DNA of 64,000 nucleotides from sequence record phage_1, one strand, 5' to 3'. The position numbers and the translations under genes are program-made. The notes under the pieces were generated by a model that was not told the DNA's origin, made no database searches, and saw only the letters and a program-made list of their open reading frames with translations. Shown piece after piece: positions 1 through 62,144 of the stretch (positions are counted from its first letter, which is position 1; each line of letters starts with the position of its first letter).

Positions 1-117
1 TATTAAGATCTTAAAACGCGTGCAGGCGCGCGCGTGATCCTTATTAAGAGATCGTGATCGGACGGAAGTCCTAGTTTGGGTACCCTGTGTATTTTTTACG
101 TGGTTTCCCTATCGTGT

Positions 118-327
118 GTTCAGACCACCACTCGATGTCCAAAAACCCATAGCTTCGGTGGTCGCCTCCCTGGTCGGTAGACTCTGACAAGTCGACCCAC
201 AACACCAACCCGTCCGGGGACGGATTTTTATTCCAACGACAAGCTCCACGAAAATCCCCGCAGAGGGACTCACTGCTGTGTGACTCACCGGCTCCTGGAC
301 GCCTACGCCTCGAGCCGGTAATTTTTT
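118..327 (+). ncRNA. Candidate structured ncRNA 1 (~210 nt)
   Basis: No credible ORF. Starts at a TTAC-N15-TGTG motif (96-118). Stems GACCACC 123-129/GGTGGTC 157-163 and ACCGGCTC 287-294/GAGCCGGT 312-319, the latter followed by a T6 run. Structure judged by eye. Confidence 0.55.
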
Positions 328-351
328 GATTACGTGAGTTTGTTGTTATAT

Positions 352-925
352 GCGAATAGCGATTGACCGCGCCAATGGTCCAATCACTTTTAAACCCTGT
401 ACGCTAGGGCTCCAAGTCCTGGGATTGTTACCCAGGACGCTTTTTCGAAAATACCTACCGTGGTGTCTTCGACAAAGCGCAATCTAACACTGCGTGATTT
501 ATTATGTTCTGGAAAACTTTCGCCGTGGAACAGAACCGGTGAGCGTCGGCGGGGATTCCGACAATCACCACCCATTCAGGTACTCGGTAAATAACCGACC
601 TGCCGACGGTGCTACGTCGGGCGTAGTTCGGTTTGCGAGAGTGTCGAGAAAGTCGACTGCGCACCCATGACAAAATCCGAGTTGACCGTGGCAGCGCCAG
701 AGGACTGGGCAGCGGAGAGACGTCGTTGAACTTACCTCCGATAGTTATCGCTGATTCCGCTCTGGCGTCGGGCCAAAACTGATTCGAATTCGGCGTTGCG
801 TCGAAAAGGGGTCTGCGTGTAGAACCGCAGACTTGGGGGATGACTCCAGACGGAGGTGGTCATATCTTGCCGGCTCGGAACAGACGAGAGGGGTGGGTAC
901 TCCCGTTGAGAAACGACGGTACCTG
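352..925 (+). ncRNA. Candidate large structured ncRNA 2 (~570 nt)
   Basis: Starts at TTAC-N15-TATG (330-352). Near-continuous stems: 416-423/431-438, 603-608/615-620, 694-702/760-768, 811-817/826-832 and others. No credible ORF. Confidence 0.6.
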
Positions 926-984
926 GCTGATTAAAATTTACAGATTCTGCGTGAGGTATGATAAACCAAACGGAGAATTAAATC

Positions 985-1560
985 ATGAACTTGTATCGCA
1001 TCGGGTTTTACCGGAACGAGGTACCAGAATCGGTTTTGGTTGTCTTAGCCGAAAACGAGGAGCAGGCCAAATCCTTCTGGCCGGTTAGCGCAGAGCGTAC
1101 AGCGGTTGCGTGCTGCTACGACGGTCCAGTTGCCGCAACGGATGTCGCTGCAGGCGTAGTCCTGAAGATGGGCCGATGGGAAGATTACTCCCATCCCGGT
1201 TTGGAGTTTGTTTCCGAACCTGCCAGACATTCCTGGGAATTTCCCTCAGGCAACACCGAGACGTATTTCGGATTTCAGGTTAAACAACCTTCGACGCTCA
1301 AACTGTACCTGGTGTACAGCGACGCCGCTACCGAAGACTACGTCGATTCCGGAATCATCGTCGGGGCAACAACCCCTGCTGCGGCATTCGCACATTGGGA
1401 CGGTGATAAACCCGGAATCGTTTCGGTCTGTGAGCTACCACTTGAAGCCGGTTTGGTTACGAACATCAAGTGTGAGCAAGGCCAGGAGCTGACTTGGATC
1501 CGCCAGGATTACCTGACGGAAACGACATTCGAGTACACACCGAGGAAGGTGACCCAATGA
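985..1560 (+). CDS. Hypothetical protein with two tandem copies of a small phage domain (paralog of 2283..2525)
   Basis: GGAG SD. Repeats MNLYRI..VLVVLAENEEQA and LKLYLV..IIVGATTPAAA resemble MNLYLL..IIVAAPTEQAA of ORF 2283. Confidence 0.8.
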   Translation: MNLYRIGFYRNEVPESVLVVLAENEEQAKSFWPVSAERTAVACCYDGPVAATDVAAGVVLKMGRWEDYSHPGLEFVSEPARHSWEFPSGNTETYFGFQVKQPSTLKLYLVYSDAATEDYVDSGIIVGATTPAAAFAHWDGDKPGIVSVCELPLEAGLVTNIKCEQGQELTWIRQDYLTETTFEYTPRKVTQ

Positions 1561-2048
1561 CCACGATAGCGTTCGATGGAAAAGTCTTAGCTGCTGACGG
1601 CCAGTTAACCCGTGGGTCGAATATCTGCAACCTGAATACCCAGAAGTTATTCGTCTGTCCTCCTGACGAGGAGTGGTGGATTACCGGTGAACGAATTGTG
1701 GTGTTCGGGGTAAGCGGCGACATCACAGGACAATTGGCCCTGCTGGAAACGGTCCGCTTGAGACCCGGCTACAAGGGGTTAACACAAAGCTCGCAGTTAC
1801 CTGCGAAGATGGATTTTACTTTCCTGATGCTTTTGGCCTCAGGAAAAGCGATAGTCGGTGGGAAGCGTGAAGACGACGTGTCGTTGTGGTGGAGTGAAGC
1901 CACACCACCTCTGGCAACCGGAAGCGGTTACGAGTATGCGTTGGGTGCGATGAAGATGGGCGCGAATGCGGTTCGTGCTGTTGAGATTGCGTCCGAATGC
2001 GATATCTACACCGGTGGTGAGATTAGCACTTACGAACTACGGAGGTGA
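1557..2048 (+). CDS. Ntn-hydrolase / HslV-like peptidase-family protein
   Basis: ATGA overlap with the upstream stop. Begins M-TTIAFDGKVLAADGQ (N-terminal Thr) and has ATGSGYEYALGAM, both typical of the proteasome-beta/HslV fold. True start is 1557, not 1494. Confidence 0.65.
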   Translation: MTTIAFDGKVLAADGQLTRGSNICNLNTQKLFVCPPDEEWWITGERIVVFGVSGDITGQLALLETVRLRPGYKGLTQSSQLPAKMDFTFLMLLASGKAIVGGKREDDVSLWWSEATPPLATGSGYEYALGAMKMGANAVRAVEIASECDIYTGGEISTYELRR

Positions 2049-2140
2049 ATCATGCGGGAGTCAGAAGCACGCAAGCTTGACCCCATCAATCGCCTGCGAT
2101 AACGGGGTAGCGCATCCGTATAAACACGTTAAAGAATTCT

Positions 2141-2216
2141 AGGAAAGTGACGCAATTGGTAGCGTACCGGTCTCCAAAACCGGCTGTTTAGAGTTCGAGT
2201 CTCTACTTTCCTGCCA
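2141..2216 (+). tRNA. trnW: tRNA-Trp (CCA)
   Basis: Full cloverleaf: acceptor AGGAAAG/CTTTCCT, D stem ACGC/GCGT, anticodon arm CCGGT-CTCCAAA-ACCGG (CCA at 2174-2176), T loop TTCGAGT, encoded 3' CCA. Confidence 0.95.
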
Positions 2217-2282
2217 CATTTAGCCAACAAGGCCATGATTCAAAGCAGAATGACACCGAATGTCTAACTGCGGAGAATAATC

Positions 2283-2525
2283 ATGAACTTGTATTTGCTA
2301 GAACGAACTGACGATATCGGGTATGATGAATTTGATTCCATAATCGTGGCGGCTCCTACGGAGCAAGCTGCGTGTGCAATTCCTCCCGACTGTGGTCATT
2401 GGATGGACTGCCGCTGGTTACCGAAAGAGCGCTGGGATGAAGGGCTTACCCTGACCGTTACTCTTATCGGTACTACGCACTATCCTGCTGGGACCGTCGT
2501 TCATGAATCGTTCAATGCTGGCTAA
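2283..2525 (+). CDS. Small hypothetical phage protein (paralog of 985..1560)
   Basis: GGAG SD. The 5' DNA cggagaat(t)aa(a)tcatgaacttgtat is shared with ORF 985. Confidence 0.8.
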   Translation: MNLYLLERTDDIGYDEFDSIIVAAPTEQAACAIPPDCGHWMDCRWLPKERWDEGLTLTVTLIGTTHYPAGTVVHESFNAG

Positions 2526-2704
2526 ACAGTGGGCTTCGGCCCACTAACCCTATTCGAGCCGTGATACTTACTCAGATTGTGCGGGTTGATGTCCCGCATG
2601 AGCCGGTAGCAGCTCAGACCTACGGTAGACCAATAAATCCGTAGCAGCCAGGTACACAAAGCACCAGGTCGCTTGTACAGGATGCTGGGTATCTGACCGG
2701 TCAT
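2522..2704 (-). CDS. Possible 60-aa hypothetical protein
   Basis: GAGGT SD 5' of the ATG on the minus strand; converges on the 2528-2545 hairpin. Confidence 0.35.
   Translation of the reverse strand: MTGQIPSILYKRPGALCTWLLRIYWSTVGLSCYRLMRDINPHNLSKYHGSNRVSGPKPTV
2528..2545. terminator. Hairpin with TTCG loop
   Basis: AGTGGGC-TTCG-GCCCACT directly after the ORF 2283 stop; no T-run. Confidence 0.5.
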
Positions 2705-2732
2705 AACCTCATTCGATACGAGACACGTTTAT

Positions 2733-3105
2733 GCATGAAATACTCCAGTACATCAGGATGTTGATTTCCAACGTCCGGTTCTGGGTATTCAATCATGTTT
2801 GGTTTACAGGCGATGGGTTTTCCCGCAAGGGCCCCACTTACAGACTGGCGTCTCCACGACAACCGTCCCTAGGGGACAGGCAAGCACCGGCCCATTAAGC
2901 CGCCACGCTACGCCTGTAAATCCACAATCTGATAACCGAATGGGATTGAGTTCCCAGTGTTAGGGTGACTATGTGTCACCGTAGGCGCGGTACCTCATAC
3001 GGCCGGTACGCCACGAATGTACGTGATAGCGGGTGGTGCTTGGAGACGCTAAGACCTGACCTTGCGGCCAGGCTCAGAAGAAGAAGTCCATCACCCGCAT
3101 TCAGA
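2733..3105 (+). ncRNA. Candidate structured ncRNA block 3
   Basis: Starts at the G of a TATG (2730-2733). Stems 2756-2763/2769-2776, 2801-2812/2911-2923 (ends ...ATCCA) and 3029-3038/3089-3098, plus a CCC-GCAA-GGG GNRA hairpin. Confidence 0.55.
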
Positions 3106-3300
3106 AATGAATTTAGGTTAATTATTGGAAGTGATGAAATCGTTTACGTGATAACTTAGTAGTATGCAACGAACAATACCAGAGTGACTTTACGAGGTTA
3201 CTGTGGTATATGTCGGTGCTCCGGGCAACGTGTTGCCGTAGATAAGCCCGAGGGAGCTGAGTGCACTAACACACACCGGGATGCACCGGCACCTTACAAT

Positions 3301-3369
3301 GGCTTTGTAGCTCAGGTAGGTAGAGCAACCTCTTCGAGGAAGGTCGCCGGTTCGAGTCCGGTCAAAGCA
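3301..3369 (+). ncRNA. tRNA-like element with shortened anticodon arm
   Basis: Acceptor GCTTTG/CAAAGC, TA at 8-9, D arm GCTC-AGGTAGGTA-GAGC, variable AGGTC and T arm GCCGG-TTCGAGT-CCGGT are canonical. The anticodon arm is only 13 nt (ACCTCTTCGAGGA) versus 17. No encoded CCA. Confidence 0.75.
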
Positions 3370-3370
3370 A

Positions 3371-3452
3371 GAGCAGCGAAGTTAGAGGAATTAACACCCG
3401 ACTCATAATCGGATATTTCGACGGTTCGAATCCGTGCCGTTTGCTCGCCCCA
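3371..3452 (+). pseudogene. Degenerate tRNA-Met/Ile2 (CAT)
   Basis: Anticodon arm CCGA-CTCATAA-TCGG (CAT at 3404-3406) and T loop GGTTCGAATCC are present. The acceptor stem is bulged and U8 is missing. Confidence 0.6.
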
Positions 3453-3790
3453 TTTGTGTTATCCTTATCCCGAAGGCATTCGAAATAAGACGCGTATCCA
3501 CACACGGGTCAAGGGTAACACGAACCACTTCCGCGGTCACCGTGTCCATTGCCGCCTACCTGCATGGGCTGTCCTCCGACACGGTGACTTCGGGCCAACT
3601 TACAGGCCAGGGCCGTTTGGGTTTTTCTTACGCATCCATCCAGAGCCACCTCGCGCCCTAGTCTGTTACCCCTTTTCTGTTCCTGGTTTGCCAACTAAAT
3701 CAATTAAGCCTGGTGCGTTGCCCTGGGAACAGAAAAACTTATTCGGTTACACACCGAACCCACCCACGAGGGATATGTCGTGGACTACCA
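3453..3790 (+). ncRNA. Candidate structured ncRNA block downstream of the tRNA-like pair
   Basis: Two perfect 11-bp stems (3536-3546/3578-3588 and 3673-3683/3726-3736). The overlapping N-terminal extension of ORF 3454 is not credible. Confidence 0.5.
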
Positions 3791-3828
3791 ATAGAAGCAG
3801 CAATAGTAGAAGTAAGAAGGAAAGCAAC

Positions 3829-4650
3829 ATGTTTACAGTTAAACGTGTAATTGATGGTGACCGCATTATTACCGAACATGAAAAAGTTCGTATCGGTGAC
3901 CGTAAGTCTCGTGTATTCCGCGAGGCGTTAAAGATGCTCGAGAACGAGCGCTTCGACATCGTTGTCGATGATGAAAAGTTAGCCCTTAATCCGGGGTTAA
4001 AACGCGTTGCCCCTGATGTGGCTGATCCGAACACCATGCATTTGTCTGACTACTGCAGCTGGTCGCACAGATTATATAAAAGTCAGGTTTATGCACACAC
4101 GTATTTGCGGCAGCTTTTCCCCAACCTTATTATCCCCGATTTGGAAACGGTCGAGGTGTTTAACTGCAACGCACGCGAGTTTATTAGCTACGTGCTAGAT
4201 AATAAGGGCAATGCTATCTTGGTATTGGACACAAATTCCCGCATACCTGATGCTGTGGCTAGCATACGTGGTGAAATCATCGGTTACGGTACTCCCCCAG
4301 AGAAATTAGGCTGGTACAAACCATCTCCTGATAGCGACATGGCGATCATTGTCTACACTCAGGAAGAACTGCAACAAGTCGAATTAGAGCCTGGTCCATC
4401 TATCGAGTTCACTGATGTCCAGGAGCAGTCGCAGTGGATTAACGGTGAGTCTGTTGTTACTGTTTTAAAAGGCGCTCGCCCTGGCGACCGGTCAGTCGAT
4501 GAACTGATTGGCGCAATGTGCATCGAAGAAGAATCTGGATACGATCCTGATAACCAGATCAGTACCGGTGCGTTGTACGAACTGTTTTATAAAGGCGACG
4601 AAGTCTACGTGGTTAACTCTCACGGTAAGACTACCGACGTCCTTCGCTGA
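3829..4650 (+). CDS. Hypothetical protein (273 aa)
   Basis: AAGGA SD before ATG 3829; terminator downstream. Confidence 0.8.
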   Translation: MFTVKRVIDGDRIITEHEKVRIGDRKSRVFREALKMLENERFDIVVDDEKLALNPGLKRVAPDVADPNTMHLSDYCSWSHRLYKSQVYAHTYLRQLFPNLIIPDLETVEVFNCNAREFISYVLDNKGNAILVLDTNSRIPDAVASIRGEIIGYGTPPEKLGWYKPSPDSDMAIIVYTQEELQQVELEPGPSIEFTDVQEQSQWINGESVVTVLKGARPGDRSVDELIGAMCIEEESGYDPDNQISTGALYELFYKGDEVYVVNSHGKTTDVLR

Positions 4651-4740
4651 ATTAGCTAACGCCCAGTAGCTATGTTCCTGACGATTAGCCCTCGTCTGAC
4701 CTTGTAAGACCTTGTAGATTTACATGCCAACACCAGGGAA

Positions 4741-4782
4741 GTCCTCACTCTTCGGAGTGAGGACAACTCTTTTATTTTTTTT
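4741..4782 (+). terminator. Intrinsic terminator
   Basis: GTCCTCACTC-TTCG-GAGTGAGGAC, then a T-rich tract. Confidence 0.85.
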
Positions 4783-4800
4783 TGTATCCCAAATATTCAC

Positions 4801-4816
4801 AGATAGATATTACCTA
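4801..4816 (+). promoter_or_regulatory. Class A phage promoter motif (AGATAGATATTAYCT)
   Basis: One of 8 intergenic or upstream copies of the motif; precedes ORF 4875. Confidence 0.7.
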
Positions 4817-4874
4817 AGTGAGATGAGAAAGCCTCATCTGAATTTCCCCAACTCGACTATAAAAGGTAAGCATC

Positions 4875-5825
4875 ATGTACAGACCAAGTAATCCTAGTGC
4901 TATTGAAGGATTAAACCAGGATGGCTTCAGCCTCGCAGAAGCAACCCGCATTCGACCTTTCTTACCTCGCAGATTCTTCCCTTTCGGTTCGTTATACAGA
5001 ACGAATTTCGACGCTTGGGAAGCGATACGTGCTGTAAAAGATGCACTACAGTACAAGAACTTCGAATTCCGATTTGTTTTCAAATGGGGCAACGGCGAAT
5101 TGCTCCACCACTTCGGATTCCAACAGAACGAGTTCATTGAGTATACCTCACCTACGTACCACACCAGGTTCTTAAGTATCGAATTCGTTCGCCATTTCGG
5201 CGATGCACTCTTTACGGAACGGGCTACAGATGAAAACCACGGACGTAGGCTGATGTTAACGAACGGCGCACTGCGCATCAAGATGAATCGTTTACGGGAA
5301 GCGTATAACCAGCTTATCAATCCTGAACCGGTAATGTTTCCAACTGTAGCTGATTTGAACATTACACCGCTCCAGTTGCCTGTGGATGTGGATAGACCGA
5401 TTCTGGCAATCCACGCTCTCCAGGCAGGCTATGCAAACTGGTATAAAGAGCACAGTCTCCCGAACACCAGATTGAACATCGCACCGTTTGAGTTGTGCCT
5501 GTTCTTAACGTTACGCAAACAGCTCGAGCCAGAAAACTTAGACTTACGTTATCTGGCTAAAACAGATAGCGGTAATTACTACCCAACGACCTGGATGCTG
5601 GCGGCTGTACTACCCGGCGGTGAAATTATCGGTAACCCAGTCACCGATGTTCAACAGTTACCATCACCGTTAGCACCACCGAAAGATTCAATCTATCCGT
5701 ACGCTTCGTGGTACGCGAGCAGTATTGGCGTGAGATGGTTAATGTTACACGTTCCTGAAGAGGTCTATAATTTATTCCCGCATGAGCAATGGCTCCGTGC
5801 GTATGAAAATCGGTTTGGTTACTAG
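4875..5825 (+). CDS. Hypothetical protein (316 aa)
   Basis: AAGGT SD, long ORF, flanked by a promoter motif and a terminator. Confidence 0.85.
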   Translation: MYRPSNPSAIEGLNQDGFSLAEATRIRPFLPRRFFPFGSLYRTNFDAWEAIRAVKDALQYKNFEFRFVFKWGNGELLHHFGFQQNEFIEYTSPTYHTRFLSIEFVRHFGDALFTERATDENHGRRLMLTNGALRIKMNRLREAYNQLINPEPVMFPTVADLNITPLQLPVDVDRPILAIHALQAGYANWYKEHSLPNTRLNIAPFELCLFLTLRKQLEPENLDLRYLAKTDSGNYYPTTWMLAAVLPGGEIIGNPVTDVQQLPSPLAPPKDSIYPYASWYASSIGVRWLMLHVPEEVYNLFPHEQWLRAYENRFGY

Positions 5826-5836
5826 TCGATGCTTTT

Positions 5837-5871
5837 GGGGGAACTTCGGTTCCCTCTTTTTTTTCTTTTTT
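5837..5871 (+). terminator. Intrinsic terminator
   Basis: GGGGGAAC-TTCG-GTTCCCTC plus T-run. Confidence 0.85.
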
Positions 5872-5907
5872 CACGACTGCCTCAGAATCTTAATGGAGGA
5901 AGTTACC

Positions 5908-6324
5908 ATGATTACGCAGTGCTCATACCAGACGCAAGATTTATTTAAAGCATTGGAAGAAAATAAGCTACCCACGACTTTAAGACCGCAGTGCAGTTAT
6001 TCAAGAATGCTTGCAAGTGAGGTCTTTCCGGTGCTAATGCAGTTGCCTCAATTCCAACCGTGGCTCGACTCGCTAGATGTGGTAGATGTTGTGGCTATCT
6101 ACACTGGGTCAGACACACCAACAATAAATACAAGCGAGTGTTTATCCCGTAGCGAATCGTCGGCGATAAATGAAATGCCGCAGCTAATGCCTTCTTTATT
6201 CGATTCGATGTGCGCTGCAGTTATGCAGAAACGACTACCTTATGAGGAAGTATTCGCCATTGTGTTAGACAGCATCCACGCAATGAATTATAAACACTAT
6301 AAAACCCTCGGAACCTTACACTGA
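5908..6324 (+). CDS. Hypothetical protein
   Basis: GGAGG SD before ATG 5908. Confidence 0.75.
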   Translation: MITQCSYQTQDLFKALEENKLPTTLRPQCSYSRMLASEVFPVLMQLPQFQPWLDSLDVVDVVAIYTGSDTPTINTSECLSRSESSAINEMPQLMPSLFDSMCAAVMQKRLPYEEVFAIVLDSIHAMNYKHYKTLGTLH

Positions 6325-6391
6325 CTTTTTTACGGCAGGCACCTATCTTGTAGGGAGTCTGTGCTGTAATAGATTCCAAAGGAGATGCTCG

Positions 6392-6781
6392 ATGAAAAAC
6401 AAACTGCGTCCGCTGGACGTGATTATGGCGCATCCGGATACCCTCAAGAAAATTAAAGTGGTCAATGAACTTGACCGTGGTCTCCTGGATACTATTCAAT
6501 GGGGTTTTACTTTCCACCCCGATGAAGAGAACAACACGCGTCAATTAGATGTCTGCGACGGCGTAGAAATTGATTGGTCTTCTAACGAAGGCTTCAACGA
6601 TGTCGTCGATTATGTCAAACAAGCCACCGTTCCACCTGTGTTTCCCGTAGCTGGTTTAGCGGAACACACAATTTCTCTCCGCCGACTGGTTAACGCTCAA
6701 CCAGAAATCGTGCGTGAAGGCGAGGCGTGGACGTCAGGCATTACCCATCATCTTAAGGATGTGCTGGGTGTTGCCGGTTAA
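6392..6781 (+). CDS. Hypothetical protein (129 aa)
   Basis: AAGGAG SD; TTAC-N15-TGTA motif at 6330-6352. Confidence 0.8.
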   Translation: MKNKLRPLDVIMAHPDTLKKIKVVNELDRGLLDTIQWGFTFHPDEENNTRQLDVCDGVEIDWSSNEGFNDVVDYVKQATVPPVFPVAGLAEHTISLRRLVNAQPEIVREGEAWTSGITHHLKDVLGVAG

Positions 6782-6832
6782 AAAAGAAGAAGTACCTCTA
6801 CTCACGTAGAGGTACGGAATCTTTCTTTTTTT
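6781..6832. terminator. Bidirectional terminator
   Basis: GTACCTCTAC-TCAC-GTAGAGGTAC flanked by A- and T-runs between convergent genes. Confidence 0.8.
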
Positions 6833-6833
6833 G

Positions 6834-7646
6834 TTACGACTTGAAGCGTCCACCGTTCATGTAGTTCCAACGGTTTCCGATGTTGTCGTTGTGGACCAGA
6901 CAACGTTGCATTTTCGGCAAGGTGTCTTCGAACATTTGACCCGCGTCCGAGTAACCTTCAATAACGTTTCTGAAGGCACCGAACTCCATACCATTTTCCA
7001 GTTTACCGGAGTCCATGTCGAAGATCATGGTGTTGTAAATATATTGCTTAACAGCCATGACTGCCAGCTCACCTACAACCGGATAGAATGCTGGTTTGAT
7101 TTCGTTCATCTCCTGGGATAGTTCGTACTTCACCACGAGTTTGGTAGAGTAAACGAACATGCCTGGGTCTTTGATACGGATGGTATTCGGGCCGAGTACC
7201 TCGACCTCTGGTGAGGCGATACGTGGCATCGCCGACTGACTATCAACCACTTGTTGGGTGGATGCTAATACGCCAGAGGTGGCACCGTCCAGATATGAAC
7301 CTGCGGGAGGCATGGTGTACGCCTGTCCGGCAACGGGTGTTACAGAAATGTGGGCATCCAGAATAGGACGACCGCCTGTTTTGATGTCGTCGAGATAATA
7401 CACGCGACTGAAATAATCTTGCGTGTCGTTATCCCAAGGGACACCTTGCAAATCTACTTCTTGATACTGCCCCATTCTGGAGATTTCAGGGACCAGAATC
7501 TCACGAATAACACGTTGTTGGATTTCGTTATCTACAGAGCTTGCAATTCCCAGTAACTTGAGGTTTTCTGGAACAAAAGCCGCCTGTAGAATCGGGGCAG
7601 GAATATGCTGTCTGATTTTACGCAGACAGTAGTCGATAACATTCAT
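6834..7646 (-). CDS. Conserved jumbo-phage protein, probably virion structural (270 aa)
   Basis: GGAG SD before MNVIDYCL. The minus-strand orientation matches other structural genes in the window; function is inferred. Confidence 0.7.
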   Translation of the reverse strand: MNVIDYCLRKIRQHIPAPILQAAFVPENLKLLGIASSVDNEIQQRVIREILVPEISRMGQYQEVDLQGVPWDNDTQDYFSRVYYLDDIKTGGRPILDAHISVTPVAGQAYTMPPAGSYLDGATSGVLASTQQVVDSQSAMPRIASPEVEVLGPNTIRIKDPGMFVYSTKLVVKYELSQEMNEIKPAFYPVVGELAVMAVKQYIYNTMIFDMDSGKLENGMEFGAFRNVIEGYSDAGQMFEDTLPKMQRCLVHNDNIGNRWNYMNGGRFKS

Positions 7647-7766
7647 TCTAAGGCTCCTATGAAGCTCGTAGGACAACTCATACCATCGGGTAATGCTATC
7701 CCATTGCCTGACATTAAAATACGTTTTACGACCTTTATGTGCGCACCATACTCGAAGAAATTTTGC

Positions 7767-7780
7767 ATAGATATTATCTT
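7767..7780 (+). promoter_or_regulatory. Class A phage promoter motif
   Basis: ATAGATATTATCTT upstream of ORF 7810. Confidence 0.7.
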
Positions 7781-7809
7781 CGTGAATTATCCTTAAGGAG
7801 CATTTCTCG

Positions 7810-8130
7810 ATGACGCGCATGTTCTTTAATTTCTCTCCAGGGACAAATGAACAGATTGTGCCTGCGGACATGTTACTGTGCGCGATACAAGAAGTCATTT
7901 ATCCCGGCACGCATGAGTTTCCACGCGAGTGGACACGCATTGCCGAAAGTTATTTTGGCACGGAAGCGTGGTTTGTTATTTCGGCGTTGGGCCGAAACCA
8001 TAGCTATCCCTTTCATTACAAAAATGGAGTTGTGCAAACGTGGTCAGAATATACCTCGAACCAGCTGCGGTTCATTCTAGCTTCTGGGGGCCTGTCGATG
8101 CTTCCCAGTACGCTACCGCTCTGCGGATGA
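7810..8130 (+). CDS. Hypothetical protein
   Basis: AAGGAG SD; first gene of a coupled operon. Confidence 0.8.
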   Translation: MTRMFFNFSPGTNEQIVPADMLLCAIQEVIYPGTHEFPREWTRIAESYFGTEAWFVISALGRNHSYPFHYKNGVVQTWSEYTSNQLRFILASGGLSMLPSTLPLCG

Positions 8131-8690
8131 GCCAAAAAGAACGCGAGATGTTAACTGTACAACTGTTACACACTGCGCTCGAAGATATCTTTTACTCCGT
8201 TCCGGAAATGCCTAATGCACGTATGGAACCTTTGCTGGAACCTTATACTGACGCTTTTAATCTCACGATGATGTTGGTGGCTGACCAGATCATACTTCCA
8301 CCGAAAACAGTTCCTGTGGAACGTACACACGTTTCCAGTGGCGGTTTGGGTACTCCGGTTAATAAGACGAAAGAGACCGTAGCGATTTTACGTTCTACCG
8401 AATATCTTATCGGATTAGCATTCGAAGACTGTTACAACAGTTTCCTGGACAGTATCCATGCGCTTGTGGAGAATGCTGTGAAAGCCGCCAAACACCCGTT
8501 TAATCGTTATGCGACGATTAAACTGGAACCACACATAACCCGTCGTGGGCAGGTGCAATCTCTGGAGTTACAAAATGGAGAAGACATCAGATTCATCCAC
8601 TACCGCCAATGCTTCCCAAACAAACGATATCGTCCGTCTGGTACTGATCGATCACATTGCCTCGACGGCATACGTCAGGATATTGAATGA
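8127..8690 (+). CDS. Hypothetical protein
   Basis: ATGA overlap with the previous stop. Confidence 0.75.
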   Translation: MSQKEREMLTVQLLHTALEDIFYSVPEMPNARMEPLLEPYTDAFNLTMMLVADQIILPPKTVPVERTHVSSGGLGTPVNKTKETVAILRSTEYLIGLAFEDCYNSFLDSIHALVENAVKAAKHPFNRYATIKLEPHITRRGQVQSLELQNGEDIRFIHYRQCFPNKRYRPSGTDRSHCLDGIRQDIE

Positions 8691-8703
8691 CCCCAGCGAC
8701 ATC

Positions 8704-9012
8704 ATGTTCAGCATGTATGATGTTAACACGGGGTTGAAGCATATCATTCTCTGTATGCTCGAATACATGATTCCGACATTTACAGAACACGGTGCGTGGG
8801 ACACAGAAACAGTCTCACTGATTGTTAGGTGTTATCGTCCCAGAAGTCATTCGCGGGAAATCCACACCATCGCGTCACACGTTCATCGTGCTATCTGTGA
8901 GGAAATGGGCATTCCTCCGAAAGGGTATCGGTATCATTATAATCAAGCAGACAGAATTCTCCGTTTCATTCCACGTAAGGTAACAGATGTCTATGATGAC
9001 GGTTTATACTGA
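8704..9012 (+). CDS. Hypothetical protein (start uncertain)
   Basis: Fills the gap in the operon. Confidence 0.6.
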   Translation: MFSMYDVNTGLKHIILCMLEYMIPTFTEHGAWDTETVSLIVRCYRPRSHSREIHTIASHVHRAICEEMGIPPKGYRYHYNQADRILRFIPRKVTDVYDDGLY

Positions 9013-9394
9013 GTTCGTGCGATTGACTTGCCGACTCACCGCACTCGTCAAAGAGAATCTCGGCATCGATTACCAGGATGCTGCGGTAGAGCTTGACGAC
9101 TATATCGAGCAAATTGTTCGGTTGCATGTTCTGCGGAAAAAATATGGCGTTATCGATAGCATGATACGCCAGTTCTTTATGGAGTATGTTCACGATAACC
9201 CAATCATTACTCCAACCACGTCGGCAAAATACTGGGCTCTTTGTCGATTTGAGTTGTTGATACGGGACACCGATTGCATCTGGCAAGCAATCGACGAGGA
9301 CATGACTTATTTACCACAATCCGACTTCCTCCTTTGGCATGTAGGAGATGGTGTCTGGAAAATGTTAACTACAGGGGTTACTTACAATGATTGA
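8987..9394 (+). CDS. Hypothetical protein
   Basis: Overlapping ORF in the operon. Confidence 0.7.
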   Translation: MSMMTVYTEFVRLTCRLTALVKENLGIDYQDAAVELDDYIEQIVRLHVLRKKYGVIDSMIRQFFMEYVHDNPIITPTTSAKYWALCRFELLIRDTDCIWQAIDEDMTYLPQSDFLLWHVGDGVWKMLTTGVTYND

Positions 9395-9896
9395 GCGATC
9401 TCATTTTTATATCCCCGGCTATCAGTTATTGGCTGGGCCGTTAACGGAGTTTTCGCCAAACGATGTGCTCCGCGAAGTGAATGACGATTTGAACTCGATA
9501 ATCAATACCGCCATGAGCTTCGTGGAACGTGGAACCATTGGTAGTGAGTTAAAGTTTATGATGAACAATACCTTTGGGTTTGTTTCTCGTACACTGAATG
9601 CGCACGGCGTTGTGTTGGAAAATGTGCAAGTAATCACTTACGGCACCGCAATTCAAAACATCGGTCGTGCGTATATGACCGCCGTATCGCAGTCTCCTTA
9701 TTGGTTTACTCACTACGGTCGTTGGGTCGGTGCACAATACACAACGCGCAATCCGGCGGATGTCGAATTCTTATTAGACTATAACGGTGGTGATAAATTC
9801 CCACAGTTTGCCAGCCAAGAAGCGTACGAGCGAATCACCCCACAACTTCTGCCTGTTATCGATTTGCTTATCGGTAATCTCGGAGGTCGTGTATGA
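9387..9896 (+). CDS. Hypothetical protein
   Basis: Overlapping ORF; GGGG SD-like sequence. Confidence 0.75.
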   Translation: MIERSHFYIPGYQLLAGPLTEFSPNDVLREVNDDLNSIINTAMSFVERGTIGSELKFMMNNTFGFVSRTLNAHGVVLENVQVITYGTAIQNIGRAYMTAVSQSPYWFTHYGRWVGAQYTTRNPADVEFLLDYNGGDKFPQFASQEAYERITPQLLPVIDLLIGNLGGRV

Positions 9897-10381
9897 GTGT
9901 TCTGTTTGATGTGGCGGATATTGCGAACCAATATAGCGCGACTCGGTTTTACGAGCATGTTCGTGAAGCGGCATTGCGTGTACTGGAAGCCAGTAACCTG
10001 GAGATTGATGAAACACAGATACGTGATTTTTATCAACGTTTTGCGTTTGCGTATATCATCGGTGTGAAAACTCGTGACCCTTCGACGATGGTTGATTTGT
10101 TACAGGAAGACACGCTTGAACCTCTGGGCAATTGGGAGTTGGTGTCCGATGGTCTGTCCGTTGACCAGTTCGCTAAGGAAACGTCTGTCGATACGACGTT
10201 TCTGGCAGCACAAGGTTCGCCCGAACAACATCAAGCCGCCTTCGGCGCTGCGGTAAGTTTGCTGGCCGAAGAGTTAACAAACTTAACTGGTTTTGCTGGA
10301 CTGATAGAGTCGCTGTATCCGGGGCGATATCAAACGTATGTAGGTGATAGTTTTAACGATGTGGTGTTAATCTGCGAATGA
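9893..10381 (+). CDS. Hypothetical protein
   Basis: GGAGG SD, ATGA overlap. Confidence 0.8.
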   Translation: MSVLFDVADIANQYSATRFYEHVREAALRVLEASNLEIDETQIRDFYQRFAFAYIIGVKTRDPSTMVDLLQEDTLEPLGNWELVSDGLSVDQFAKETSVDTTFLAAQGSPEQHQAAFGAAVSLLAEELTNLTGFAGLIESLYPGRYQTYVGDSFNDVVLICE

Positions 10382-10809: not shown

Positions 10810-10818
10810 GGAGTACGA

Positions 10819-11828: not shown

Positions 11829-11831
11829 AGT

Positions 11832-11871
11832 AAGCCCACACTTCGGAGTGGGTTATTTTTTTTTCTTTTTT
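11832..11871 (+). terminator. Intrinsic terminator
   Basis: AGCCCAC..TTCG..GTGGGTT plus a long T-run. Confidence 0.8.
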
Positions 11872-11919
11872 CACGTATCCCGCAAGTCTTATAGCTGAGT
11901 AAAAACCAAGGGGCCAGAC

Positions 11920-15531: not shown

Positions 15532-16599
15532 TTATTTTTCTTCTAGCTCTGTCGTCAACGGGATAATCAAATCCCGTTGGATAAAGTTATAGAAGGATTT
15601 AGTCAGACGTGTGAGGACTTTAGAGTCCACATAACGCGCCAAATCAACCAACATCGTACGTTTATGCTTTTCCATATTCCCCTGGTTGTATTGAAGACAA
15701 AACAGTGCCCAGTACCAGTTCACCATGTTCTGGTGCCAGGTGTTCTGCAGTGTTTGACCTGGTTCTCGAAAGACAATCAGTTCCAGTGCTGTGTGGCCTT
15801 CTTCATCAGGGTGTTGGAAGAACAATGGGATGTTGTTTAAGACTTGTCCCGGTAACGGGTTGGCAGCCAGTAGTTTACTACGGATGCCTTTTGCGTGCTT
15901 CACAGCTAAAGCTTGAAGCGGCGGAACAGGAATGACACGTAATGTTTCATCCGGTTCAATCTCTTTCCCGAAGGCTATCGCACGATGTATATTTACAAAG
16001 GCGATATCCATGTAGCTCGGCAACATGCGAGAGATCACATGTCGTTGGAGATACACAGGTGTGGCAATAGGTTCGGTACCGCGACTGTAGTGCTGCTGAC
16101 CTTTGACATATTGCCAAAGCAAAGCAACCAGGTTGATTTCGATCACCGTAACACCTCGGGGCCGTCCGTCACCGAACTTCCAATTGAGGTTGGTATACTC
16201 ATGGTAGAGGTAACGTGCGGGGGTGTAGTCGCGGAACGAAAGGTCTGGATTTACTGGGCGGGCTACGAGAGAGATTACCTCATCTTGGCCCTGGATAAAC
16301 TTGCTATTAAAGATTTGACCGTACTCACCAACAGACGTCAAGCGTAAGGCGTTACCGATCTGAACAAGTTTGCGACGGCAAGCCCATTCGATGTCTTCGT
16401 ACTCTGGTTCACCGGCATAGCCGATGGCAGACAACACCTCTTGCAACAAATGGCCATTACCAGCACTGCGATTAAGCTGTTCGTAGTAGTTGCGTATACG
16501 CTGGCTGTTGTTTTTTACGTGAGCCGCTAATGTTATAGCGGAGGGGTCCGTGCTGTGACCCTTTATGGCCACTTGGTTTAACTCGGCTTGGCTGAACAT
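15532..16599 (-). CDS. Conserved protein divergent from chimallin, probably virion structural
   Basis: AAGGAG SD before MFSQAEL; syntenic with the phiKZ gp52 region (inference). Confidence 0.7.
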   Translation of the reverse strand: MFSQAELNQVAIKGHSTDPSAITLAAHVKNNSQRIRNYYEQLNRSAGNGHLLQEVLSAIGYAGEPEYEDIEWACRRKLVQIGNALRLTSVGEYGQIFNSKFIQGQDEVISLVARPVNPDLSFRDYTPARYLYHEYTNLNWKFGDGRPRGVTVIEINLVALLWQYVKGQQHYSRGTEPIATPVYLQRHVISRMLPSYMDIAFVNIHRAIAFGKEIEPDETLRVIPVPPLQALAVKHAKGIRSKLLAANPLPGQVLNNIPLFFQHPDEEGHTALELIVFREPGQTLQNTWHQNMVNWYWALFCLQYNQGNMEKHKRTMLVDLARYVDSKVLTRLTKSFYNFIQRDLIIPLTTELEEK

Positions 16600-16760: not shown

Positions 16761-16805
16761 TGCGAACCGAACTATGATTGCAATCACTATTAAGGAATAT
16801 TTAAA

Positions 16806-24404: not shown

Positions 24405-24427
24405 TTACGTTAGTGGGAAATCATGTG
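24405..24427 (+). promoter_or_regulatory. Class B promoter motif TTAC-N15-TGTG
   Basis: AAAATTTAC, 15 nt, TGTG; same spacing as 8 other copies. Confidence 0.65.
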
Positions 24428-25217: not shown

Positions 25218-25250
25218 AGTGCAATCGACTATTCGCGGAGTTCAACTATA

Positions 25251-45438: not shown

Positions 45439-45508
45439 GGTCTACTCTCAAATATGGTGTCTGCTATACTGATTTGTGGGTAACGTATTTTCTAAAAGGA
45501 ACGTCTAA

Positions 45509-58725: not shown

Positions 58726-58741
58726 AGATATATATTACCTA
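58726..58741 (+). promoter_or_regulatory. Class A phage promoter motif
   Basis: AGATATATATTACCTA upstream of ORF 58789. Confidence 0.65.
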
Positions 58742-58788
58742 GGTGAGATTGCATTGGTAATCTTTTAACCGACTATCACTTAAGGAAT

Positions 58789-59550: not shown

Positions 59551-59608
59551 ATATCACGTTACCCTCAAACCCTATGCAATCGACCATTAATCTTAAGGAG
59601 TATTTATA

Positions 59609-60573: not shown

Positions 60574-61121
60574 AACTCTCTATTATCGTCGCGATGGACC
60601 GCAACAACGCCATCGGTAAAAACAACGAACTGCCGTGGCGTCTGCCTGCCGACCTGGCTAACTTTAAGGCAATCACCACAGGGAAGAACGTTATCATGGG
60701 CAGTAAGACCTGGGAATCGTTAGGTTGTCGTCCTTTGCCTAACCGCGGCAACTTAATTGTTACTCGTAACCCAGAAGGGTATATCAGTGGCCGGGAAGAA
60801 CACACGGACATGCGTTTGGTGACGTTTCACACGAGTATTGATTTAGCCATCAAAGCTCTGGAACGTATCGAGAAAGATACCGGGAAAGAGCAAGAGGTGA
60901 TGATTATTGGCGGCGCATCAATTTATCAACAAACCCTCGCTCGTGCGGATCGTATTTATCTATCGCGTATTGACATTGCTGTTGAAGGTGCAGATGCTTT
61001 CTTCCCAGAAATTGACAGAGATGTTTTTCAAGTCGATTACACCATGACCCATTTACCCGACGGCCAGAAACACACGCACCGTTGGACGTATCAAATTTTA
61101 AATCGTATCGCTGGAGTTTAA
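60570..61121 (+). CDS. folA: Dihydrofolate reductase
   Basis: IVAMDRNNAIGKNNELPWRLPADLANFK, IMGSKTWES, RPLPNR and IIGGASIY. Confidence 0.97.
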   Translation: MKLSIIVAMDRNNAIGKNNELPWRLPADLANFKAITTGKNVIMGSKTWESLGCRPLPNRGNLIVTRNPEGYISGREEHTDMRLVTFHTSIDLAIKALERIEKDTGKEQEVMIIGGASIYQQTLARADRIYLSRIDIAVEGADAFFPEIDRDVFQVDYTMTHLPDGQKHTHRWTYQILNRIAGV

Positions 61122-61122
61122 A

Positions 61123-61452
61123 ATGGAAAAGAAATCTGTTAAAGGTTACGTGATGGAAGTAACCCCAAAAGCGGCTGAACTGGCGAGAGAATATACCGGA
61201 TGTATCGTGCCACTGACCTCAATCGTGGTGTGTGAGGGTTCCTTCTATCTCATCTTCGGCAGTAATGAGCCGGTCTATGCGTACATCGATGACCCTGATC
61301 AAGTTACAGCCCTCTCTATTGCGATGGGTAAAATGGTATCAGACAAGATGATTGAATTCGTTGTCGGGAAAACGATGGACATTATCCGCAATCCGGTTGG
61401 ACACAGCGGAATAAAATGTAAGAAGTGGCAGCTAGCTTGGCTGGCACATTAA
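61123..61452 (+). CDS. Hypothetical protein
   Basis: GGAG SD. Confidence 0.75.
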   Translation: MEKKSVKGYVMEVTPKAAELAREYTGCIVPLTSIVVCEGSFYLIFGSNEPVYAYIDDPDQVTALSIAMGKMVSDKMIEFVVGKTMDIIRNPVGHSGIKCKKWQLAWLAH

Positions 61453-61479
61453 ACGGTTATCTTCTTAAGGAGTATTAAA

Positions 61480-62070
61480 ATGCTTAGTGAACGTGCGCCC
61501 CGTTTAGAAGCGGCGGTATTGAAAATTGAACGTGTGAATATCAAATTGTTATCGAACGATGTTGGTCGGGCATCGTACAGTGACTTATGGAGTATCCCCG
61601 CACCACCGCGTACGTTGGTGGTGAACTGGTTAACGAATCGTTTGGGCTCATGCGATGTTAAAGCCAAGGATGTCGTACTAACGCTACCTGACGGCAAAAC
61701 AACTACCGGCGATGTGTTGATTGCCAGTGGTTCTAAATTGCGTATGGGCGATATTCGCTTGGGTGAGTCCTATCTTCCGGACGGTATGCGACCTATGCCG
61801 ATTGGCGAGGTAGAAAACCGAATTCTGGAAAAAGAAAGAGTGCTGGCGTTCATACGCCGCCCGCCGGATAGCACGGTGTCGTTTAAGCAACGTAAACCGG
61901 CTGCAGACAACACACCCGTTGTCGAGTGGCTCGAAAAGTATTTTGGCGAATATGGCATCAGTCCTGATGAGGTCATTCTCATCAACGGCCACGCCATGAT
62001 GCCGTTTAAGCCCAGCCCGTATTACACGATGGGACAACTGCGCGCTTCCTTCAAAGGGAAAGCACGCTAA
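61480..62070 (+). CDS. Hypothetical protein
   Basis: AAGGAG SD; terminator follows. Confidence 0.8.
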   Translation: MLSERAPRLEAAVLKIERVNIKLLSNDVGRASYSDLWSIPAPPRTLVVNWLTNRLGSCDVKAKDVVLTLPDGKTTTGDVLIASGSKLRMGDIRLGESYLPDGMRPMPIGEVENRILEKERVLAFIRRPPDSTVSFKQRKPAADNTPVVEWLEKYFGEYGISPDEVILINGHAMMPFKPSPYYTMGQLRASFKGKAR

Positions 62071-62075
62071 AGTGT

Positions 62076-62103
62076 GGGGGACTTCGGTCCCCTTTCTTTT
62101 TTT
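62076..62103 (+). terminator. Intrinsic terminator
   Basis: GGGGAC-TTCG-GTCCCC plus T-run. Confidence 0.85.
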
Positions 62104-62144
62104 GCGTTTTAGGCCAGTGATATGACTACAACGAGGGACAGCTA

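What the first reader, a model, noticed from the sequence alone, without database searches (positions are those of the whole stretch)
96..62124. Bipartite promoter motif TTAC-N15-TATG with fixed spacing
Nine copies have exactly 15 nt between the elements: TTAC..TGTG 96-118, TTAC..TATG 330-352, 938-960, 3144-3166 and 3190-3212, TTAC..TGTA 6330-6352, TCAC..TATA 11871-11893, TTAC..TGTG 24405-24427 and TCAC..TATG 59554-59576. There is also TTGC..TATG at 62102-62124 and an N16 variant on the minus strand before the polymerase exonuclease gene (45465-45488). The motif combines the phiKZ middle element (AAanntTAC) with the TATG start element recognised by the nvRNAP. Four of the copies drive non-coding blocks, and at 3212 the final G is the first base of a stem.
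Basis: partly seen in the sequence, partly recalled or inferred. Interest (0 to 1): 0.65.

Follow-up and report, generated by a model that had tools for sequence, protein, structure and literature searches.

The report
Middle-type promoter motif of a jumbo phage
The window is the left quarter of an SPN3US-like giant phage of E. coli, and the TTAC-N15-TATG motif is a real, conserved, rigidly spaced promoter signal placed before replication genes and small RNA genes; it is this phage group's version of the "middle" promoters of phage phiKZ, whose reading machinery is still unknown.

Summary
All listed copies are at the stated coordinates. In the whole genome (Escherichia phage vB_EcoM_Lh1B, a Seoulvirus), TTAC-N15-TATG occurs 22 times, 14 of them in the 5.7% of DNA that is intergenic. 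Every other spacing from 8 to 23 gives 1-8 hits. Shuffled intergenic DNA gives 0.55 hits against 13 observed.

The same N15 peak appears in four relatives from other genera (SPAsTU, phiEaH2, Machina, CR5), but not in a phiKZ strain or in Ea35-70. Sites sit at orthologous positions: 63-68% of orthologues of motif-bearing genes keep a site, against about 3% of other genes. The two boxes are conserved (0.85 and 0.89 identity) while the spacer drifts (0.53).

The refined consensus is TTtTTTACR-N14-TRTG, ending about 33 nt before start codons, on the gene strand.

It is a separate class from:
- an AGATAGATATTAC-N5-TG motif, homologous to phiKZ early promoters, which precedes the non-virion polymerase genes;
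- TATG-only sites before structural genes.

It drives both DNA polymerase parts, the dihydrofolate reductase operon, tRNA-like genes and two terminator-bounded small RNAs. The mapped phiKZ middle promoter P78M has the same TTAC-N15-TATG geometry.

The start site and the polymerase are inferred, not shown. Copy 3190-3212 is doubtful, and copy 16515-16537 was missed.

The parts
96..118 (+). TTAC-N15-TGTG promoter-like site. The predicted +1 is G118. It heads a unit of about 115 nt that ends at terminator 210-230.
   Evidence: 26.5 bits. Related sites in phiEaH2 (165308) and Machina (241436). Terminator.
330..352 (+). TTAC-N15-TATG site. The predicted +1 is G352. It heads a unit of about 95 nt that ends at terminator 416-445.
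   Evidence: 23.9 bits. The promoter, the RNA length and the terminator are kept in phiEaH2, whose terminator stem has a different sequence that still pairs. The fold has z = -2.8.
938..960 (+). TTAC-N15-TATG site, 25 nt before the ATG at 985.
   Evidence: 18.7 bits. Matching sites in SPAsTU and phiEaH2.
3144..3166 (+). TTAC-N15-TATG site that overlaps the end of annotated CDS 2971-3159. It lies upstream of the tRNA-like genes.
   Evidence: 24.3 bits. A strict N15 match with a very similar spacer lies at SPAsTU 135429-135451.
3190..3212 (+). Doubtful copy. The core boxes are present, but there is no T/A-rich upstream part, and the copy sits inside hairpin 3176-3209.
   Evidence: Under 7 bits. 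Fold. No strict match listed in SPAsTU.
3301..3370 (+). tRNA-like gene downstream of the 3144 site. A second, degenerate one lies at 3373-3445.
   Evidence: Rfam tRNA at 40.9 bits, and 21.5 bits (below threshold) for the second. ARAGORN does not call either.
6330..6352 (+). TTAC-N15-TGTA site, 40 nt before the ATG at 6392.
   Evidence: 20.8 bits. There is a weak orthologous site in phiEaH2 at the same distance (10.5 bits).
11871..11893 (+). TCAC-N15-TATA site, 27 nt before the divergent family B DNA polymerase gene (11920-14211). It directly follows terminator 11833-11854.
   Evidence: 22.9 bits. The same TCAC..TATA variant stands before the orthologue in phiEaH2 (23.6 bits, 27 nt) and in Machina (18.6 bits, 33 nt), each with a different spacer. 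Pfam PF20286.
16515..16537 (+). It lies inside a minus-strand CDS, upstream of gene 16806-18659 and of the intron-split RNA polymerase beta gene.
   Evidence: 23.3 bits. Orthologous sites in phiEaH2 (182199) and Machina (18488).
24405..24427 (+). TTAC-N15-TGTG site, 38 nt before the ATG at 24465.
   Evidence: 26.2 bits. Orthologous sites at 38 nt in phiEaH2 and 42 nt in Machina.
45465..45488 (-). ATAC-N16-TATA variant, 27 nt before the DNA polymerase part encoded at 43654-45438 (minus strand).
   Evidence: It scores 19 bits if one spacer base is removed. The orthologous upstream region has TTAC-N16-TATA in phiEaH2 and TTAC-N15-TATA in Machina. phrog_3011, DNA polymerase.
59554..59576 (+). TCAC-N15-TATG site, 33 nt before the ATG at 59609. 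It heads the operon that holds dihydrofolate reductase.
   Evidence: 16.6 bits. Orthologous site in phiEaH2 at 32 nt (18.3 bits).
62102..62124 (+). TTGC-N15-TATG site, 21 nt before the ATG at 62145.
   Evidence: 23.5 bits. The TTGC variant is kept at the orthologous place in phiEaH2 (20.8 bits) and Machina (17.3 bits).
9260..9282 (+). Weak candidate, ATAC-N15-TCTG, inside a CDS and 105 nt before gene 9387.
   Evidence: 15.5 bits. phiEaH2 has an 11.2-bit site at 102 nt. It could be chance.

Best explanation
TTtTTTACR-N14-TRTG is the middle-class promoter of the SPN3US-like jumbo phages. The host polymerase does not read it.

Proposed mechanism:
- Transcription starts at the last purine of TRTG (G in 26 of 30 sites). 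TRTG acts as an initiator element, as TATG does in phiKZ.
- The TTAC box lies at -22 to -19, with a T- or A-rich stretch at -26 to -23.
- The TTAC box marks the class. It separates these promoters from TATG-only late-type promoters and from the unrelated AT-rich early promoters.
- The rigid 15-nt spacer (one copy has 16) implies that one protein assembly touches both boxes.
- That assembly is most likely the phage's non-virion RNA polymerase, together with a specificity subunit or an early phage DNA-binding protein.

The regulon covers DNA replication and nucleotide metabolism genes, tRNA-like genes, two small terminator-bounded RNAs at the left genome end, and some virion gene operons.

Shown: the motif, its spacing, its placement, its conservation, and its separateness from the other two classes.
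Inferred: the start site, the timing and the polymerase.
For: 1. Statistics. There is an N15 peak and strong intergenic enrichment.

2. Anatomy.
- The logo from 30 sites shows two conserved blocks and a nearly free spacer.
- Sites lie on the strand of the next gene, mostly 21-40 nt before its start codon.
- Many sites lie just after an intrinsic terminator.

3. Independent genomes.
- The N15 peak appears in SPAsTU (20 of 74 hits over N8-23), phiEaH2 (16), Machina (26) and CR5 (13).
- The Lh1B-trained matrix finds 22, 21 and 20 sites of at least 14 bits in Machina, phiEaH2 and CR5. Shuffles give 2.2, 2.0 and 3.0.

4. Positional conservation.
- Orthologues of motif-bearing genes keep a site in 15 of 24 cases (Machina) and 19 of 28 (phiEaH2).
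- Orthologues of genes without a site have one in 6 of 172 and 5 of 194 cases.
- A footprint that does not preselect sites gives identity 0.85 at TTAC, 0.89 at TRTG and 0.53 in the spacer.

5. Class separation.
- An AGATAGATATTAC-N5-TG motif has 18 copies, all on the + strand, 17 of them intergenic.
- It aligns with the phiKZ early promoter context AAGATcTATATTAC-N5-TG.
- It stands directly before the RNA polymerase genes at 30406-34748.
- TATG-only sites are conserved 27-39 nt before structural genes.

6. Downstream genes are of the replication type.

7. Literature.
- phiKZ middle promoters carry AAanTTACc at about -24, and TATG has G as +1 (PMC4666361).
- A second study places TACT about 22 nt upstream of the start (PMC8244752).
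- P78M has the same N15 geometry.
- In 201phi2-1, middle promoters also drive a tRNA and some structural genes (PMC11512511).
Against: - No 5' end has been mapped. The only public RNA runs that hold this phage are stored as contigs, which cannot show starts. The contig ends near two sites (131 against G118; 3155 against G3166) do not coincide with the predicted +1.
- Purified phiKZ nvRNAP does not transcribe P78M in vitro, and the TTAC element lowers its activity threefold. The polymerase or factor that reads this class is therefore unknown even in the model phage.
- Nine of 30 sites have TGTG, yet phiKZ nvRNAP tolerates no change in TATG.
- The T-rich stretch at -26 to -23 often coincides with the T-run of an upstream terminator, so it may not be a recognition element.
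- The temporal class is inferred from gene functions only.
Confidence: 0.7

Rival explanations
1. These are early promoters, read by the virion RNA polymerase that is injected with the DNA.
For: - Several sites lie at the left genome end and before small genes of unknown function.
- Some are in tandem with the AT-rich class, for example at genome positions 74824/74869, 96826/96876 and 112122/112154.
- The polymerase for phiKZ middle promoters has never been identified, and a modified vRNAP was one published option.
Against: - A different, much better conserved AT-rich motif matches the phiKZ early promoter almost base for base, and it precedes the non-virion polymerase genes.
- The TTAC class precedes replication genes and some virion operons.
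Confidence: 0.12
2. These are host promoters, read by sigma-70 or an alternative sigma factor.
For: tTTACg resembles TTGACA in 4 of 6 positions, and TATG could be the start of a -10 box.
Against: - The gap between TTTACG and TATG is 14 nt, outside the 16-18 nt range for sigma-70.
- The consensus scan finds no sigma-70-like site at any copy in 1-12500, and no excess of such sites overall (12 found, 15.3 expected).
- phiKZ-type phages transcribe independently of the host polymerase.
Confidence: 0.03
3. The motif is not a promoter. It is an operator for a phage DNA-binding protein, or a processing signal in RNA made from upstream promoters.
For: - No start site has been mapped.
- The phage encodes small helix-turn-helix proteins, for example at genome 96948-97313 (phrog_7126).
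- Many copies lie in read-through position behind terminators.
Against: - The motif has strict strand polarity, a constant 21-40 nt distance to start codons, and a place after terminators where a new start is needed.
- Stand-alone units of motif, about 100 nt and a terminator occur with no upstream gene (96-230, 330-445).
- The geometry equals that of a mapped phiKZ promoter.
Confidence: 0.08
4. The pattern is a chance recurrence of two short words.
For: Each box is only 4 nt long, and a few hits inside coding DNA are probably chance. Examples are 21012, and genome 171651, where the ATG of TATG is a start codon.
Against: Shuffles, the spacing scan, four independent genomes and orthologous placement all argue against it.
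Confidence: 0.01

Closest known systems
phiKZ middle promoters (AAanTTACc centred near -24; P62M and P78M also carry TATG at the start)
   Same: - A TTAC core lies about 20 nt upstream of the start.
- An A/T-rich stretch lies 5' of it.
- TATG lies at the start in some members. P78M has exactly TTAC-N15-TATG.
- The class is used for non-early genes, including tRNA and some virion genes in the relative 201phi2-1.
   Different: - In phiKZ the motif is weak and TATG is the exception. The phiKZ-strain genome shows no N15 peak and no excess of matrix hits (14 against 11.8 in shuffles).
- Here both boxes are nearly invariant and the spacing is rigid.
- The 5' flank here is mostly T-rich rather than A-rich.
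- Position -18 is G/A rather than C.
- TGTG and TATA are accepted at the start.
phiKZ late promoters (TATG with G as +1, read by the five-subunit non-virion RNA polymerase)
   Same: The same four-base element sits at the predicted start. Lh1B also has conserved TATG-only sites 27-39 nt before structural genes.
   Different: - The motif studied here has an obligatory upstream TTAC box.
- It tolerates G at -2 (9 of 30 sites), which abolishes phiKZ late promoter activity in vitro.
phiKZ-type early promoters (AT-rich extended element near -10, read by the virion RNA polymerase)
   Same: Both contain a TTAC or TTAT word, and both are phage-specific.
   Different: They are a different class. In Lh1B the early-type motif is AGATAGATATTAC-N5-TG, a contiguous block of about 20 nt with no N15 architecture. 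It precedes the RNA polymerase genes at 30406-34748.
AR9 late promoters (A-11 ACA, six bases, then TA/G+1)
   Same: A short upstream word lies at fixed distance from a start-site word, and a sigma-less multisubunit phage polymerase reads it.
   Different: The words and the spacing differ, and AR9 recognition depends on uracil in the template strand.
T4 middle promoters (MotA box at -30 plus a sigma-70 -10 box)
   Same: The logic is the same: a class-specific upstream box at fixed distance from a core element shared with other classes. This comparison rests on my own knowledge and was not tested here.
   Different: T4 uses the host polymerase with MotA and AsiA. The sequences are unrelated.

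Membership tests
phiKZ-type middle promoter | A TTAC-containing box about 19-24 nt upstream of the transcription start. | tested here: inconclusive
   The box is present at a fixed 15 nt from TRTG. No start site has been mapped in this phage, so its position relative to +1 is inferred from phiKZ.
phiKZ-type middle promoter | The same geometry as an experimentally mapped member that carries both boxes (P78M). | tested here: met
   The site 76 nt upstream of the PHIKZ078 orthologue in phage fnug reads AAAATTACC and has 15 nt between TTAC and TATG. The motif and the start at G are described in PMC4666361.
phiKZ-type middle promoter | An A-rich stretch 5' of TTAC (AAan) and C after it. | tested here: not met
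   Positions -26 to -23 are mostly T (17-23 of 30 sites), with A in 6-9 sites. Position -18 is G in 23 sites, A in 6, and never C. The flank is A/T-rich, but the strict consensus differs.
phiKZ-type middle promoter | Active in the middle period of infection. | not testable with these tools
   There are no time-resolved data. The only proxy is that downstream genes are of the replication or nucleotide-metabolism type.
phiKZ-type middle promoter | Distinct from the early and late classes of the same phage. | tested here: met
   A separate early-type motif and a separate TATG-only class before structural genes both exist.
phiKZ late promoter (non-virion polymerase initiator TATG) | An invariant TATG overlapping the start, with no conserved upstream element. 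| tested here: not met
   The upstream TTAC box is conserved, and -2 is G in 9 of 30 sites.
Bacterial sigma-70 promoter | -35 and -10 hexamers 16-18 nt apart. | tested here: not met
   The gap would be 14 nt. No consensus-scan hit falls at any copy in 1-12500, and there is no excess of such sites.

The most novel reading that the evidence does not exclude
SPN3US-like phages may use a two-point promoter code for their sigma-less polymerase. It would consist of an initiator (TRTG) plus a box at -20 that is read by a dedicated phage factor, with geometry closer to a TATA/initiator promoter than to a bacterial -35/-10 promoter. A candidate factor is the small helix-turn-helix protein at genome 96948-97313, which itself carries tandem early and TTAC-type promoters.

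The motif is sharp enough to predict the whole regulon from sequence, including two small RNAs at the genome end. These phages grow on E. coli and Salmonella. Together, this would make the unknown machinery of middle transcription in nucleus-forming phages directly findable.
Probability: 0.25. Interest if true: 0.7.

Novelty: new variant of a known kind. Interest (0 to 1): 0.5.

Why it matters
[quoted passage not shown] In phiKZ it is still unknown what reads middle promoters.

In the SPN3US group the middle-type signal is sharp. It has about 30 copies per genome, two near-invariant boxes and fixed spacing, and it is conserved over four genera. This has three consequences:
- It gives a sequence-only map of a temporal regulon.
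- It gives a clean template for spacer and box mutants.
- It gives a bait for finding the factor, in phages that grow on genetically easy hosts.

It also annotates non-coding units (two small RNAs and tRNA-like genes) that the deposited annotation leaves blank.

Tried and rejected
1. Public RNA data. One run search and one read-laying run. All holders are stored as contigs, mostly from wastewater. They cannot show starts, and the contig ends near two sites do not match the predicted +1. I treat this as no evidence either way.

2. Papers. Ceyssens et al. 2014 (the original phiKZ promoter paper) is not held. I used Yakunina 2015, Wicke 2021, Sokolova 2020 and Putzeys 2024 instead.

3. It maps instead to coding sequence of the RNA polymerase beta gene (Lh1B 20590-20613) and is conserved as protein. 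The true orthologues of 45465-45488 were found by the downstream gene.

4. A first conservation profile used sites preselected by the matrix in both genomes, so it was circular. I replaced it with alignments anchored on start codons.

5. Genome site 171651 is a ribosome-binding site plus start codon, not a promoter. Window sites 21012 and 9260 lie in coding DNA and are unconserved or weak.

6. Host sigma-70 reading: rejected.

7. phiKZ strain fnug and Ea35-70 show no N15 peak, so the sharp bipartite form is not general to all nucleus-forming phages.

8. A literature search for the two words together with phage and promoter found nothing.

The masked N positions were left as they are.

Full report
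**Identity of the window.** The window is bases 1-64000 of Escherichia phage vB_EcoM_Lh1B (OK428535.1, genus Seoulvirus). It matches at 100% identity. This is a 240-kb relative of Salmonella phage SPN3US, and so belongs to the phiKZ-like phages that carry a virion and a non-virion multisubunit RNA polymerase. I fetched the whole annotated record, so that the motif could be tested genome-wide and against the deposited gene map. The scattered N positions are masked in the record copy too. I left them untouched.

**The observation.**
- In the window, the loose pattern T[TC]AC-N15-T[AG]T[GA] has 16 hits, 14 on the + strand. Nine lie in the 7.3% of the window that is intergenic. Other spacings from 10 to 21 give 0-5 intergenic hits.
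- In the whole genome, the strict TTAC-N15-TATG has 22 hits, 14 of them intergenic (5.7% of the genome). Every other spacing from 8 to 23 gives 1-8 hits, with 0-2 intergenic.
- In 300 dinucleotide-preserving shuffles of the intergenic DNA, the strict motif at N15 is expected 0.55 +/- 0.74 times (maximum 3) against 13 observed. The loose motif is expected 4.0 +/- 2.1 times against 27 observed.

**Anatomy.**
- A matrix iterated from the intergenic hits converges on 50 genome sites of at least 12 bits, about 30 of them intergenic or evidently genuine.
- The logo of 30 sites shows T at -26, -25 and -23, then T-22 T-21 A-20 C-19, then G (23 sites) or A (6) at -18, and a weak T at -17.
- The spacer is almost free.
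- The start-site box is T-3, A (19) or G (9) at -2, T-1, and G (26) or A (4) at the last position.
- Sites lie on the strand of the next gene and mostly end 21-40 nt before its start codon.
- Many follow directly on the T-run of an intrinsic terminator.
- The consensus scan for sigma-70 promoters finds nothing at the copies in 1-12500, and no excess overall (12 found, 15.3 expected).

**Independent genomes.**
- The N15 peak recurs in SPAsTU, where 20 of 74 matches over N8-23 are at N15.
- It recurs in phiEaH2 (16) and Machina (26), against 0-6 at other spacings, and in CR5 (13, against about 4).
- The matrix trained on Lh1B alone finds 22, 21 and 20 sites of at least 14 bits in Machina, phiEaH2 and CR5. 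Block-wise dinucleotide shuffles give 2.2, 2.0 and 3.0. Nearly all these sites are on the gene strand.
- A phiKZ strain (fnug) and Ea35-70 show no peak. In fnug the matrix finds 14 hits against 11.8 in shuffles.
- The sharp bipartite form is therefore a trait of the SPN3US / Erskinevirus / Machinavirus / Derbicusvirus group, not of all phiKZ-like phages.

**Orthologous placement.**
- For Lh1B genes with a site of at least 14 bits upstream, the orthologue has a site of at least 12 bits upstream in 15 of 24 cases (Machina) and 19 of 28 (phiEaH2).
- For genes without a site the figures are 6 of 172 and 5 of 194.
- Distances to the start codon are kept, for example 27/33/27, 38/42/38, 33/34/34 and 29/29/31 nt.
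- A first conservation profile was circular, because sites were preselected in both genomes.
- A second profile aligned upstream regions from the start codon, without choosing sites in the relative. It gives identity 0.85 at TTAC, 0.89 at TRTG, 0.53 in the spacer, and 0.65 and 0.66 in the flanks, over 39 gene pairs.

**The minus-strand N16 copy.**
- 45465-45488 is ATAC-N16-TATA, 27 nt before the DNA polymerase part encoded at 43654-45438 (phrog_3011).
- The orthologous upstream region has TTAC-N16-TATA in phiEaH2 and TTAC-N15-TATA in Machina.
- The site is therefore real, and one extra base is tolerated there.
- A different conserved N16 match in the relatives turned out to be coding sequence.

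**Three promoter classes.** Reading the intergenic regions that lack the motif revealed a second, much longer motif: AGATAGATATTAC (or ..ATC), then five bases, then TG.
- It has 18 strict copies, all on the + strand, 17 of them intergenic.
- In the window it occurs at 4801, 16652, 25202, 26618, 30361 and 58726, with variants near 7766 and 16746.
- In the phiKZ strain, the word TATATTAC sits in a recurrent context AAGATcTATATTAC-N5-TG in about 25 + strand copies. [quoted passage not shown]
- The Lh1B motif aligns with it almost base for base, and one copy stands directly before the RNA polymerase genes at 30406-34748. I read this class as the early, virion-polymerase promoters.

A third class is TATG without an upstream TTAC, often as GTATGAcc.
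- It is conserved in all three genomes 27-39 nt before structural genes, for example tail sheath, virion proteins and the gene at 40951.
- This matches the phiKZ late promoter element.

The TTAC-N15-TRTG sites are thus a class of their own.
- They precede both DNA polymerase parts (PF20286 and phrog_3011), the dihydrofolate reductase operon, thymidylate kinase, an SMC-like protein, an endonuclease/RNase H pair, a pyrophosphohydrolase, tRNA-like genes and some virion operons.
- Some genes carry tandem early and TTAC-type sites (genome 74824/74869, 96826/96876 and 112122/112154). The same arrangement is reported for PHIKZ054.

**Comparison with the known system.**
- Yakunina et al. 2015 describe phiKZ middle promoters with AAanTTACc centred near -24, and late promoters with TATG whose G is +1. 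[quoted passage not shown] Purified non-virion polymerase does not use them, and the TTAC element lowers its activity threefold (PMC4666361).
- Wicke et al. 2021 place a TACT motif about 22 nt upstream of middle starts (PMC8244752).
- In phage fnug, the site 76 nt upstream of the PHIKZ078 orthologue reads AAAATTACC and has exactly 15 nt between TTAC and TATG. The geometry of the Lh1B motif thus equals that of a mapped phiKZ middle promoter.
- The differences are these. Here both boxes are near-invariant and the spacing is rigid. The 5' flank is mostly T-rich. Position -18 is G/A rather than C. TGTG and TATA are accepted at the start.

**The non-coding units.**
- Copies 96 and 330 are each followed by an intrinsic terminator about 100 nt downstream (210-230 and 416-445).
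- In phiEaH2 the same two units stand in tandem, with diverged interiors. For the second unit, the terminator stem has a different sequence that still pairs, and the RNA length is the same. The second unit folds better than shuffles (z = -2.8). These look like small RNA genes.
- Copy 3144 precedes a tRNA-like gene at 3301-3370 (Rfam, 40.9 bits) and a degenerate second one at 3373-3445 (21.5 bits, below threshold). ARAGORN calls neither.
- However, copy 3190 lacks the upstream part and scores under 7 bits. Its TTAC lies inside hairpin 3176-3209 of the RNA from 3166, and no strict match was listed in SPAsTU. I rate it doubtful.

**RNA evidence.** The run search found only contig-level data, mostly wastewater libraries.
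- Laid on 1-6000, one transcriptomic run has contigs ending at 131, 3047, 3155 and 4865 with adapter letters. Its contig depth on about 4800-5600, the gene behind the early-type site at 4801, is far higher than elsewhere.
- Contigs cannot show starts or rank genes, so I draw no conclusion from this. The predicted +1 positions remain untested.

**Mechanism and confidence.**
- I am about 90% sure that this is a promoter.
- I am about 70% sure of the full statement: a non-early, middle-type class with the start at the last base of TRTG.
- I am only slightly better than even that the non-virion polymerase reads it, probably with an added specificity factor.
- A small helix-turn-helix protein at genome 96948-97313 (phrog_7126), itself behind tandem early and TTAC-type sites, is a lead and no more.

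**Novelty.**
- I found no description of this motif for SPN3US-like phages in the held literature.
- It is a new, sharper variant of a known kind, not a new kind.

Noticed in passing
window 4801-4822, 16652-16673, 25202-25223, 26618-26639, 30361-30382, 58726-58747; variants near 7766-7790 and 16746-16770: A second promoter-like motif, AGATAGATATTAC(or ATC)-N5-TG. It has 18 strict copies in the genome, all on the + strand, 17 of them intergenic. It aligns with the phiKZ early promoter context AAGATcTATATTAC-N5-TG. One copy stands directly before the RNA polymerase genes at 30406-34748. It is probably the early, virion-polymerase promoter class.
   Followed up: partly
window 7679-7682 (minus strand), 40919-40922; elsewhere in the genome e.g. 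102491, 157523, 228772 (minus): TATG-only sites, often GTATGAcc, lie 27-39 nt before structural genes. They are conserved at the same places in Machina and phiEaH2 and have no TTAC box. They are probably the late-type class.
   Followed up: partly
window 20090-20411: A group I intron (Rfam RF00028, 69.4 bits) splits an RNA polymerase beta gene. The gene is annotated as two CDS, 18742-20250 and 20454-20693. An intron in the virion polymerase beta gene is also reported for 201phi2-1.
   Followed up: no
window 118-232 and 352-446: Two small RNA candidates, each bounded by a motif copy and an intrinsic terminator. Both units are kept in tandem in phiEaH2. There the second unit's terminator stem has a different sequence that still pairs. 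The record annotates nothing here.
   Followed up: partly
window 3301-3370 and 3373-3445: A tRNA-like gene (Rfam 40.9 bits) that ARAGORN does not call and the record does not annotate, plus a degenerate second one (21.5 bits). Relatives carry larger tRNA arrays in this region.
   Followed up: partly
window 25224-25235, 59579-59590 (variant at 58768); about 12 leaders genome-wide: A conserved box, ATCGACYATTA, lies at a fixed 27-30 nt before start codons, just upstream of the ribosome-binding site, mostly in leaders behind early-type promoters. It may be a translational or regulatory leader element.
   Followed up: partly
window 4801-5600: In one public transcriptomic run held as contigs, the contigs over the gene behind the early-type site at 4801 have depth in the tens of thousands, against about 400 on neighbouring contigs. 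Contig depth is not a reliable measure of expression, so this is only a hint.
   Followed up: no
window 984-1557: Contigs from two public runs join 984 directly to 1557. Some close relatives therefore lack gene 985-1560, which is the gene directly behind motif copy 938-960.
   Followed up: no
L003:32948-33313 (genome 96948-97313, outside the window): A 121-aa helix-turn-helix DNA-binding protein (phrog_7126) sits behind tandem TTAC-type and early-type sites. It is a candidate regulator of one of the promoter classes, but this is speculative.
   Followed up: no
window 3176-3209: A near-perfect hairpin in the RNA predicted to start at 3166 encloses the TTAC box of the doubtful copy 3190-3212. 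The region 3166-3300 folds with z = -4.7.
   Followed up: no
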